From NCBI RefSeq assembly GCF_022045235.1, contig NW_027266319.1:22444001-22508000 (forward strand): a DNA stretch of 64,000 nt. Reading direction: 5' to 3'. The first letter of the stretch is position 1. Each line of letters begins with the position of its first letter. The translations under genes and the position numbers were made by a program. This document shows, piece after piece, positions 45,409-46,253 of this stretch. This DNA is from Haliotis cracherodii. Lineage: Eukaryota. The notes below the pieces were generated by a model. It saw only the letters and a list, made by a program, of their open reading frames with translations. It searched no databases and was not told where the DNA came from.

Positions 45409-45551
45409 GTGAAGATAGACTCTCCTCATTCATTTCAAGATATAGCAAGCGTGGTGGCGGTCACTAGATCATATGCCACTACTGAGCAGTTTATTGAAGG
45501 CAAATACGATATCCATGTTCAGAAAATTGGAAACAATTACAAAGCCTACTT
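45409..45551 (+). CDS. SYN: Synapsin mutually exclusive exon A: [47 protein letters not shown](L)
   Basis: Boundaries cctag|GTG and TT|gtgagt; 143 nt, open frame, phase 0-2; absent from the ORF track; paralogous to 46111-46253. Confidence 0.9.
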
Positions 45552-46110
45552 GTGAGTCCTCTAGTGTGTGTTTCCATGGCTGTTTTTTATCACCACCAGA
45601 TGTAATCGATGGAAGAATCAAGTGTCCATTCATTGAACTCTAATATGAAAAATTAATGTTTCCAAAATTTGGACAATTGAGGTTTGTAAATTTGTAAAAC
45701 TATTTGAAATAGGCATGATAGGATTCTTGGCACTTCCATCTGTCTTTTTGATCCGATTGGTGCACCTTTGTGACATAAGTTGTTCAGTCAATGGGGATAT
45801 GTGATGGGCTGATAAGGCCATATGACTTCCACCTTATCCTCAAAATGACATGATATTTTTTTTTAATTCTCGGACCTTTGGGATGTCAATAATTTTAAAC
45901 TGAAATTTATGAAAAAAAAAAAAAAAAATTATTATTTTTTGGCGGGGGGGATTAAACCAGCATTGAAAATCATGACATTTGTAAAGAACGGCCTGTTACT
46001 TTTAAAATGACATCACATATCCCAAGAGCTTTTCCCAAGTTTTGCATGGGTGCATGGGATTTTGTTCCATTATTTTGCCTTTTACATCCATATGCCTTCT
46101 CTCTGCTCAG

Positions 46111-46253
46111 GTTAGACTAGGCAGCCATTATGATTTTCAAGACATAGCAGGGGTGGTAGCAGTTACCTCCTGTTATTCCACAACCGAACCCTACATTGAC
46201 AGCAAATACGACCTTCACATTCAGAAGATAGGCAATAAGTACAAGGCATTCAT
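46111..46253 (+). CDS. SYN: Synapsin mutually exclusive exon B: [47 protein letters not shown](M)
   Basis: Boundaries ctcag|GTT and AT|gtaagt; 143 nt, phase 0-2. Confidence 0.93.

What the first reader, a model, noticed from the sequence alone, without database searches (positions are those of the whole stretch)
45409..46253. Duplicated, mutually exclusive exons that swap part of synapsin's ATP-binding domain
Seen: two intact paralogous 143-nt exons 559 nt apart with the same phases (0-2); including both or neither shifts the frame. They are strongly diverged at the DNA level yet keep FQDIA.VVAVT..Y.TTE..I..KYD.H.QKIGN.YKA, implying old duplication and purifying selection. Differences include [22 protein letters not shown] and TRS/TSC. 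Established: this segment belongs to the ATP-grasp-fold C domain. Inference: one gene makes two C-domain variants, paralleling diversification by gene duplication in vertebrates. Alternative C-domain isoforms may already be reported from Aplysia cDNAs (recollection, unverified).
Basis: partly seen in the sequence, partly recalled or inferred. Interest (0 to 1): 0.8.

Follow-up and report, generated by a model that had tools for sequence, protein, structure and literature searches.

The report
Alternative twin exons in abalone synapsin
An abalone synapsin gene holds two old copies of one 143-base exon and uses one or the other, giving two versions of the ATP-binding domain; the feature is real, but it is already present in snail cDNAs from 2002 and in current RefSeq isoform models.

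Summary
Exon A (45409-45551) and exon B (46111-46253) are both 143 nt, have the same phase, carry AG/GT splice sites and lie 559 nt apart. They are 66% identical in DNA and share 29 of 47 residues, and they are the only two copies in the 1.18-Gb assembly.

Both match the synapsin C domain, at synapsin I residues 280-327. This is the stretch between the phosphate-binding loop and the multifunctional loop.

- In two RNA runs from two studies, four 200-nt contigs carry exon A or exon B alone, without mismatch. Their size and offsets are those of a k=31 assembly bubble with shared flanks. Depths of A and B are similar.
- Including both exons, or neither, gives an early stop codon.
- RefSeq lists four isoforms (A or B, with or without a VSNLW insert) in three Haliotis species, Gigantopelta and Biomphalaria. 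The window matches H. cracherodii best.
- Aplysia cDNA 8.2 carries the A type; cDNAs 11.1, 2.1 and 7.1 carry the B type.

A tree of the segment gives an A clade and a B clade, each holding gastropods and bivalves. The duplication is therefore older than that split.

It is already known at sequence level. No functional difference between A and B has been tested. The scan's own notes held no earlier finding of this on other DNA.

The parts
41853..41915 (+). Constitutive upstream exon (LITPKFPVVVKIGHAHSGLGK). It holds the ATP-binding Lys269 and Gly276 equivalents and the phosphate-binding loop. It ends ..GGGAAG|gtgaga in phase 0.
   Evidence: Sequence read. tblastn of Haliotis RefSeq isoforms onto the window. 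Residue numbering calibrated on Lys269/Gly276 from PMC2825198.
45409..45551 (+). Alternative exon A, 143 nt (VKIDSPHSF...NNYKAY, then a split codon that becomes Leu).
   Evidence: Spliced contigs X4 record 17 and X9 record 25. Identical to the segment in H. cracherodii X1/X4 and H. rufescens X2/X4.
45552..46110 (+). 559-nt intron between the two alternative exons, with a U2-type gtgagt donor and a cag acceptor.
   Evidence: The flanks show no similarity between the copies.
46111..46253 (+). Alternative exon B, 143 nt (VRLGSHYDF...NKYKAF, then a split codon that becomes Met).
   Evidence: Spliced contigs X4 record 18 and X9 record 26. Identical to the segment in H. rufescens X1/X3, H. cracherodii X2/X3 and H. 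asinina X1/X3.
49950..50024 (+). Constitutive downstream exon (first base completes the split codon, then [24 protein letters not shown]..). It encodes the multifunctional loop.
   Evidence: Sequence. tblastn. An RNA contig ends at about 49950 with a depth close to the sum of the A and B contigs, table 3. MFL = residues 330-343 per PMC9678998.

Best explanation
The window holds the single synapsin gene of an abalone (Haliotis; closest to H. cracherodii among the RefSeq proteins seen). One ancestral C-domain exon was duplicated in tandem. The two copies, A and B, are spliced in a mutually exclusive way between the same two constitutive exons.

Each mRNA therefore encodes one of two versions of synapsin I residues 280-327. 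This is the helix and strands between the phosphate-binding loop and the multifunctional loop. The stretch includes the Tyr301 (Src site) and Glu305 (ATP-site) equivalents, and both are kept in A and B.

Transcripts with both exons or with neither are out of frame and stop early. I infer that nonsense-mediated decay removes them. That would be enough to make the productive output exclusive.

The pair predates the gastropod-bivalve split, and each copy has kept its own diagnostic residues. What is shown: the exons, their splicing into RNA, the frame logic and the conservation. What is inferred: decay of the out-of-frame forms, and that A and B tune a C-domain property (oligomerisation, nucleotide handling or phosphorylation context) rather than being redundant.
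For: Anatomy:
- Equal length and phase, AG/GT sites, and third-position-biased divergence.
- Only two copies exist in the genome, so no processed pseudogene can explain the spliced contigs.

RNA:
- In X4 (organism C, study P4) and X9 (organism E, study P7), four 200-nt contigs align only at 45407-45551 or 46109-46253. They have 0 mismatches, 26 letters of other sequence before and 29 after.
- 200 = 28 + 143 + 29. This is what a k=31 graph bubble gives when A and B share their first 2 nt, their last 1 nt and identical flanks. The 2 extra aligned bases fit the upstream exon ending in AG.
- Depths for A and B are 9.14 and 8.99 in X4, and 7.51 and 8.70 in X9. The contig ending at about 49950 has depth 18.9 and 13.8, roughly the sum.

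Frames: both exons included gives a stop at codon 3 of B. Neither gives a stop at codon 11 of the next exon.

Databases:
- RefSeq isoforms X1-X4 of H. rufescens, H. cracherodii, H. asinina, Gigantopelta aegis and Biomphalaria glabrata are the four combinations of A or B with or without VSN[LM]W.
- Mizuhopecten X1 and X2 differ in the same segment.
- Aplysia cDNAs carry either type.

Phylogeny: the A clade has support 85/95 and the B clade 94/88, and each holds gastropods and bivalves. Five columns are fully diagnostic.
Against:
- Contigs drop rare variants, so low-level A+B or skipped forms cannot be excluded.
- The run kind 'RNA' is a guess by the tool. Runs X1 and X2 show only unspliced pieces, at depth about 3.5.
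- RefSeq X1-X4 models may in part be combinatorial predictions.
- The tree rests on 48 columns, and Mizuhopecten X2 sits on a long branch.
- No functional difference between A and B has been measured anywhere that I could find.
Confidence: 0.93

Rival explanations
1. One of the two copies is an unused or decaying duplicate (a pseudo-exon), and the gene makes only one C-domain form.
For: Some molluscs show only one type in the available models. Oysters, Pinctada and Lottia show only B. Ruditapes, Potamilus, the chiton and cephalopods show only A. The A copy is strongly diverged in Mizuhopecten X2, Tegillarca and Biomphalaria.
Against: In this genus both copies are intact. Both occur in spliced contigs at similar depth in two runs. 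Across three Haliotis species B is identical and A differs by one residue. Both types also occur in Aplysia cDNAs.
Confidence: 0.03
2. The pair is an assembly or haplotype artefact, meaning two alleles of one exon placed in tandem.
For: None was found. Mollusc assemblies can carry haplotig duplications in general (background knowledge).
Against: The copies are 34% diverged in DNA, and their flanks are unrelated. The same two segments are modelled in three Haliotis species and in other gastropod genera. Unspliced contigs from independent runs cover each exon together with its own intron (X1 record 2, X2 records 12 and 13).
Confidence: 0.01
3. The choice between A and B is enforced by competing RNA base-pairing (docking site and selector), as in insect exon clusters, and not merely by frame and decay.
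For: A 16-nt, 88% complementary pair lies at 46005-46020 and 49196-49211 (I6).
Against: A 16-nt imperfect match within 8 kb is near chance level. No conservation could be tested, because no other mollusc genome DNA was reachable. A two-exon cluster with frame incompatibility needs no such device.
Confidence: 0.1

Closest known systems
Aplysia californica synapsin cDNA isoforms 11.1, 2.1, 7.1 and 8.2 (Angers et al. 2002; AAK83047-AAK83050)
   Same: The same 48-residue segment is swapped. Isoform 8.2 carries the A type (IKIDTVHGFQDMAS...KAYL). Isoforms 11.1, 2.1 and 7.1 carry the B type ([14 protein letters not shown]...KAFV). The VSNMW insert occurs at the same place. The window's A shares 36 of 48 residues with Aplysia A and 28 with Aplysia B. 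The window's B shares 37 with Aplysia B and 27 with Aplysia A.
   Different: In the one later paper that I could read on this, the swap is called 'one possible substitution'. The original 2002 paper is not held in the library, so I cannot say whether it names duplicated exons.
RefSeq 'synapsin-like isoform X1-X4' of Haliotis rufescens, H. cracherodii and H. asinina
   Same: These are the same gene. Segments A and B are identical to the window, and the window maps at 100% to H. cracherodii in the discriminating exons.
   Different: They are automated predictions, with no statement on exon duplication, exclusivity or age.
Vertebrate synapsin I, II and III paralogues
   Same: The same C-domain segment varies between paralogues, while Tyr301, Glu305 and the QKIG..YKA core are kept.
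   Different: Diversity there comes from three genes. Known vertebrate alternative splicing affects the C-terminal regions, not the C domain. The molluscan A and B copies are not orthologous to particular vertebrate paralogues; deuterostome segments fall outside both clades.
SNAP-25 exons 5a/5b and other tandem-duplicated mutually exclusive exons in neuronal genes (background knowledge, not tested here)
   Same: An ancient tandem exon duplication in a presynaptic protein, with equal exon length and one copy used per transcript.
   Different: It is a different protein and fold. In synapsin the exon length is not a multiple of three, so frame incompatibility alone bars double inclusion.

Membership tests
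Synapsin C domain (Pfam PF02750, ATP-grasp fold) | Sequence match of the segment to the family | tested here: met
   Both exon peptides hit synapsin I, II and III C-domain structures at E 1e-12 to 1e-17. Exon-sized homologues carry precomputed PF02750.
Synapsin C domain (Pfam PF02750, ATP-grasp fold) | ATP-site residues Lys269 and Gly276 (upstream exon) and Glu305 (inside the swapped segment) | tested here: met
   The window's upstream exon reads VVVKIGHAHSGLGK. Glu is invariant at segment column 26 in all A, B and outgroup sequences. Residue roles come from PMC2825198 and PMC2922380.
Synapsin C domain (Pfam PF02750, ATP-grasp fold) | Ca2+ ligands Glu373 and Glu386 | tested here: met
   Haliotis proteins that map to the window read ..[20 protein letters not shown].. 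in constant exons. The roles come from PMC9678998. The alignment was made by eye.
Synapsin C domain (Pfam PF02750, ATP-grasp fold) | Actual ATP/Ca2+ binding and oligomerisation of each variant | not testable with these tools
   This needs recombinant protein.
Mutually exclusive exons from tandem exon duplication | Adjacent homologous exons of equal length and phase with intact splice sites | tested here: met
Mutually exclusive exons from tandem exon duplication | Each copy is spliced between the same flanking exons in RNA | tested here: met
   Four 200-nt contigs have bubble geometry. RefSeq isoforms and Aplysia cDNAs have identical flanks. The flank letters of the contigs were not displayed, so for the reads this point is an inference.
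Mutually exclusive exons from tandem exon duplication | No productive mRNA contains both exons or neither | tested here: met
   Premature stops occur in both cases. None of the contig pieces printed joins A to B, but contigs cannot show that rare forms are absent.
Mutually exclusive exons from tandem exon duplication | An identified mechanism of exclusivity (steric hindrance, U2/U12 incompatibility, RNA pairing, or decay of out-of-frame forms) | tested here: inconclusive
   The 559-nt intron argues against steric hindrance. All donors are the U2 type, gtgagt, gtaagt or gtgaga. Only a weak 16-nt complementarity was found. Frame plus decay fits, but decay was not observed.

The most novel reading that the evidence does not exclude
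The A/B pair may be a subfunctionalised module as old as the conchiferan or molluscan ancestor. In this reading the two variants give synapsin different oligomerisation, Ca2+/ATP regulation or Tyr301-site phosphorylation, and they mark different synapse or cell classes. Molluscs would then reach by exon choice what vertebrates reach with three genes. The five clade-diagnostic positions (synapsin I 283, 287, 293, 302, 327) flank the phosphate-binding loop, Tyr301 and the multifunctional loop, and would be the functional switch.
Probability: 0.25. Interest if true: 0.55.

Novelty: already known. Interest (0 to 1): 0.28.

Why it matters
Synapsin's C domain is usually treated as the invariant core of the protein. 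Known isoform diversity lies in the tails (vertebrates) or comes from gene duplication. A swap inside the ATP-binding core, kept since before gastropods and bivalves separated, implies that the two versions do different jobs. Aplysia and other snails are standard models for synaptic plasticity, so the matter is directly testable there.

The sequences themselves are not new. They have been in GenBank since 2002 and are in current RefSeq models. This work adds three things:
- the gene-level reading of the swap as a tandem mutually exclusive exon pair;
- its phylogenetic depth;
- the list of positions that distinguish the two types.

Tried and rejected
The genomic neighbourhood of exon-sized homologues P0001-P0016 in other animals could not be fetched, so I could not ask whether cephalopod, chiton or oyster genomes hide a second copy.
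- The search of protein representatives was not run.
Exons were searched one at a time, and full-length comparisons used database proteins only.
- Sequences printed in papers were not typed into tools. The same Aplysia proteins were obtained as stored proteins instead.
- The original Aplysia paper (PMC6758201) is not held in the library.
- Literature searches for synapsin together with mutually exclusive exons found nothing specific. A hit in PMC4417111 was only a reference-list entry.
- The Octopus 'Syn8.2' isoform differs from Syn-long by the VSNLW insert, not by the exon swap.
- The inverted-repeat scan of the three introns gave nothing convincing.
- Runs X1 and X2 gave only unspliced low-depth pieces.
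- Structure prediction was not run. The tools return no coordinates, so surface mapping of the A/B differences was not possible.

Full report
**Observation.**
Exon A is 45409-45551 and exon B is 46111-46253.
- Each is 143 nt, begins in phase 0 after an AG and ends with two bases of a split codon before a consensus GT donor (gtgagt, gtaagt). The intron between them is 559 nt.
- Without gaps they share 94 of 143 bases and 29 of 47 residues. Differences fall 10, 10 and 28 on codon positions 1, 2 and 3, and 18 codons differ only synonymously. The 100-nt intron flanks are no more alike than random sequence.
- tblastn finds no third copy in the window. A six-frame search of the whole 1.18-Gb, 80-contig assembly finds only these two.

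**What the segment is.**
- Each peptide matches the solved C domains of synapsin I, II and III at E 1e-12 to 1e-17.
- The PDB chain index (281-327) is one higher than the usual numbering. I calibrated on Lys269, Gly276, Tyr301 and Glu305 from the literature. On that numbering the cassette is synapsin I 280-326 plus the split codon 327.
- The upstream constitutive exon (41853-41915, LITPKFPVVVKIGHAHSGLGK) carries Lys269, Gly276 and the phosphate-binding loop.
- The downstream exon (49950-50024, [24 protein letters not shown]) carries the multifunctional loop, residues 330-343.
- The swapped piece is therefore exactly the stretch between these two loops. It holds the Src site Tyr301 and the ATP-site Glu305, and both are invariant in A and B.

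**Organism and gene.**
- A nemertean synapsin fragment (P0017) turned up as a cluster member. It served as the query for the third word search.
- Among the hits, Haliotis rufescens isoform X1 (P0035) contains the window's exon B residue for residue.
- Mapping Haliotis RefSeq isoforms onto the window places residues 127-479 of the 484-residue protein on ten exon positions between 15056 and 53091, counting A and B separately. The match to H. cracherodii is 100% in the exons that discriminate the species.
- The window is an abalone genome, H. cracherodii or a very close relative.

**Is each exon spliced in?** The single read-laying run (window 44100-50099, four runs) is the direct test.
- In X4 (organism C, study P4) and X9 (organism E, study P7) there are four contigs of exactly 200 nt. 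Two align only at 45407-45551 and two only at 46109-46253. They have no mismatch, 26 letters of other sequence in front and 29 behind.
- The two extra aligned bases fit an upstream exon ending in AG, and the window's upstream exon does end that way.
- The arithmetic fits an assembly-graph bubble at k=31. A and B share their first two bases (GT) and last base (T), so a branch-specific contig should span 28 + 143 + 29 = 200 nt. This holds only if both branches leave from and return to the same flanking sequence.
- Depths are 9.14 (A) and 8.99 (B) in X4, and 7.51 (A) and 8.70 (B) in X9. A contig whose end lies at about 49950 has depth 18.9 and 13.8, roughly the sums.
- I read this as two isoforms of similar abundance that share both neighbours. 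The tool warns that contig depth is a poor measure.
- X1 and X2 show only unspliced pieces (exon with its own intron) at depth about 3.5.
- Because the genome has no other copy of this exon, a processed pseudogene cannot explain the intron-less contigs.

**Exclusivity.**
- If A is followed by B, the frame reads L-D-stop at the start of B.
- If both exons are skipped, the next exon reads [10 protein letters not shown]-stop.
- Productive mRNA must therefore hold exactly one of the two. Removal of the other forms by nonsense-mediated decay is my inference.
- The 559-nt intron argues against steric hindrance, and all donors are U2-type.
- An inverted-repeat scan of the three introns found only a 16-nt, 88% pair (46005-46020 with 49196-49211), which is near chance.

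**Prior knowledge.**
- The alignment in Additional file 4 of the Octopus vulgaris synapsin paper (PMC6817820), and the stored proteins themselves, show the Aplysia cDNA isoforms. Isoforms 11.1, 2.1 and 7.1 carry [48 protein letters not shown] (B type). Isoform 8.2 carries [48 protein letters not shown] (A type).
- Candiani et al. 2010 describe the Aplysia variants as differing by two inserts and 'one possible substitution' in the central part.
- RefSeq lists four isoforms in H. rufescens, H. cracherodii, H. asinina, Gigantopelta aegis and Biomphalaria glabrata. Extracting the segment shows they are the four combinations of A or B with or without a five-residue VSN[LM]W insert.
- The scallop Mizuhopecten has X1 and X2 of equal length that differ in the same segment.
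- The ark-clam model KUTeg_021093 wrongly fuses a truncated A-like copy to the B-like exon. This shows that both copies exist in that genome.
- The swap is therefore already on record, in cDNAs from 2002 and in current annotation. I found no paper that calls it a mutually exclusive exon pair. The 2002 paper itself is not in the library.

**Age.**
- A maximum-likelihood tree of the 48-residue segment (31 sequences) puts all A-like segments on one side of a branch, with support 85/95. These come from gastropods, the chiton Liolophura, cephalopods, and the bivalves Ruditapes, Potamilus and the long-branched Mizuhopecten X2.
- All B-like segments fall on one side of another branch, with support 94/88. 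These come from gastropods including Lottia, and from pteriomorph bivalves.
- The nemertean and arthropod segments sit next to the B clade, and the deuterostome segments were used as the outgroup.
- Identities agree with this. The window's A shares 36 of 48 residues with Aplysia A and 28 with Aplysia B. The window's B shares 37 with Aplysia B and 27 with Aplysia A.
- The duplication therefore predates the gastropod-bivalve split. With 48 columns the deeper order is weak.
- Whether cephalopods and chitons lack B, or oysters lack A, cannot be said from gene models alone.
- Five columns separate the clades completely, at synapsin I positions 283, 287, 293, 302 and 327:
  - 283 is D/E in A.
  - 287 is D in B and outgroups, and small or polar in A.
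  - 293 is S in A and outgroups, and G in B.
  - 302 is A in A, and S/T in B.
  - 327 is L/I in A, and M/V in B (M in the outgroups).
- Each copy thus has derived states of its own.

**Mechanism and function.**
- Shown: two intact exons, spliced alternatively, with a frame-enforced choice and deep conservation.
- Inferred: the variants alter a property of the C domain other than the direct ATP and Ca2+ ligands. Those ligands all lie in constant exons or are invariant (Lys269, Gly276, Glu305, Glu373, Glu386).
- Candidate properties are oligomerisation, the movement of the loops on either side, and the context of the Tyr301 phosphorylation site. None of these has been tested.

**Limits.**
- Earlier notes of this scan on the same window concern neighbouring features and were not tested, apart from the weak complementarity mentioned above. 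A word search of the scan's notes found nothing on other DNA.

**Verdict.** The feature is real and correctly interpreted, and it is already known at the level of deposited sequences. Its interest is modest, and lies in the untested functional meaning of an ancient swap inside synapsin's conserved core.

Noticed in passing
window 16228-16254: Two consensus gtgagt donors lie 15 nt apart (exon ends at 16233 or at 16248). They add VSNLW after ..YYPNHKEM. The same insert occurs in Aplysia 7.1/8.2, Octopus Syn8.2, RefSeq isoforms of Haliotis, Gigantopelta and Biomphalaria, and the nemertean Lineus X2, so this alternative donor pair looks older than the molluscs.
   Followed up: partly
window 44300-44700 and 47300-47700 (similar copies near 7700, 23550, 27400, 29350, 33500, 37900, 42500, 60250): Copies of an interspersed repeat, in the same orientation within the two synapsin introns, have summed contig word depths of about 5e5 in all four runs. 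Hundreds of contigs end at their borders. It is a very abundant, transcribed repeat family.
   Followed up: no
window 47800-48600: A tandem repeat of roughly 50 nt lies in the intron downstream of exon B. It appears as repeated VPNTLCVPLCGILGQNRSP-like frames in the stop-free scan.
   Followed up: no
P0021 (Tegillarca granosa KUTeg_021093): This gene model joins 28 residues of an A-like copy (VRVENQTNLQDILSVLALTKCYATTENY) directly to a complete B-like exon. It is an annotation error caused by the tandem pair.
   Followed up: partly
clusters of P0005 and P0006: The clusters of two synapsin exon ORFs also list bacterial proteins: P0018 (a radical SAM protein from a Planctomycetota MAG) and P0019 (a Zn-dependent protease). 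Neither contains any synapsin sequence. This is an oddity of the protein collection, not biology.
   Followed up: yes
window 49980: T>C, a synonymous change at the third base of an Ala codon, is seen in the RNA contigs of X1, X4 and X9. It is either a polymorphism or a species difference from the assembled individual.
   Followed up: no
Mizuhopecten X2, Biomphalaria X2/X4, Tegillarca A-like copy: The A-type copy evolves much faster in pteriomorph bivalves and heterobranch snails than in abalone, the chiton or cephalopods. The B type stays close to the outgroup sequence.
   Followed up: partly
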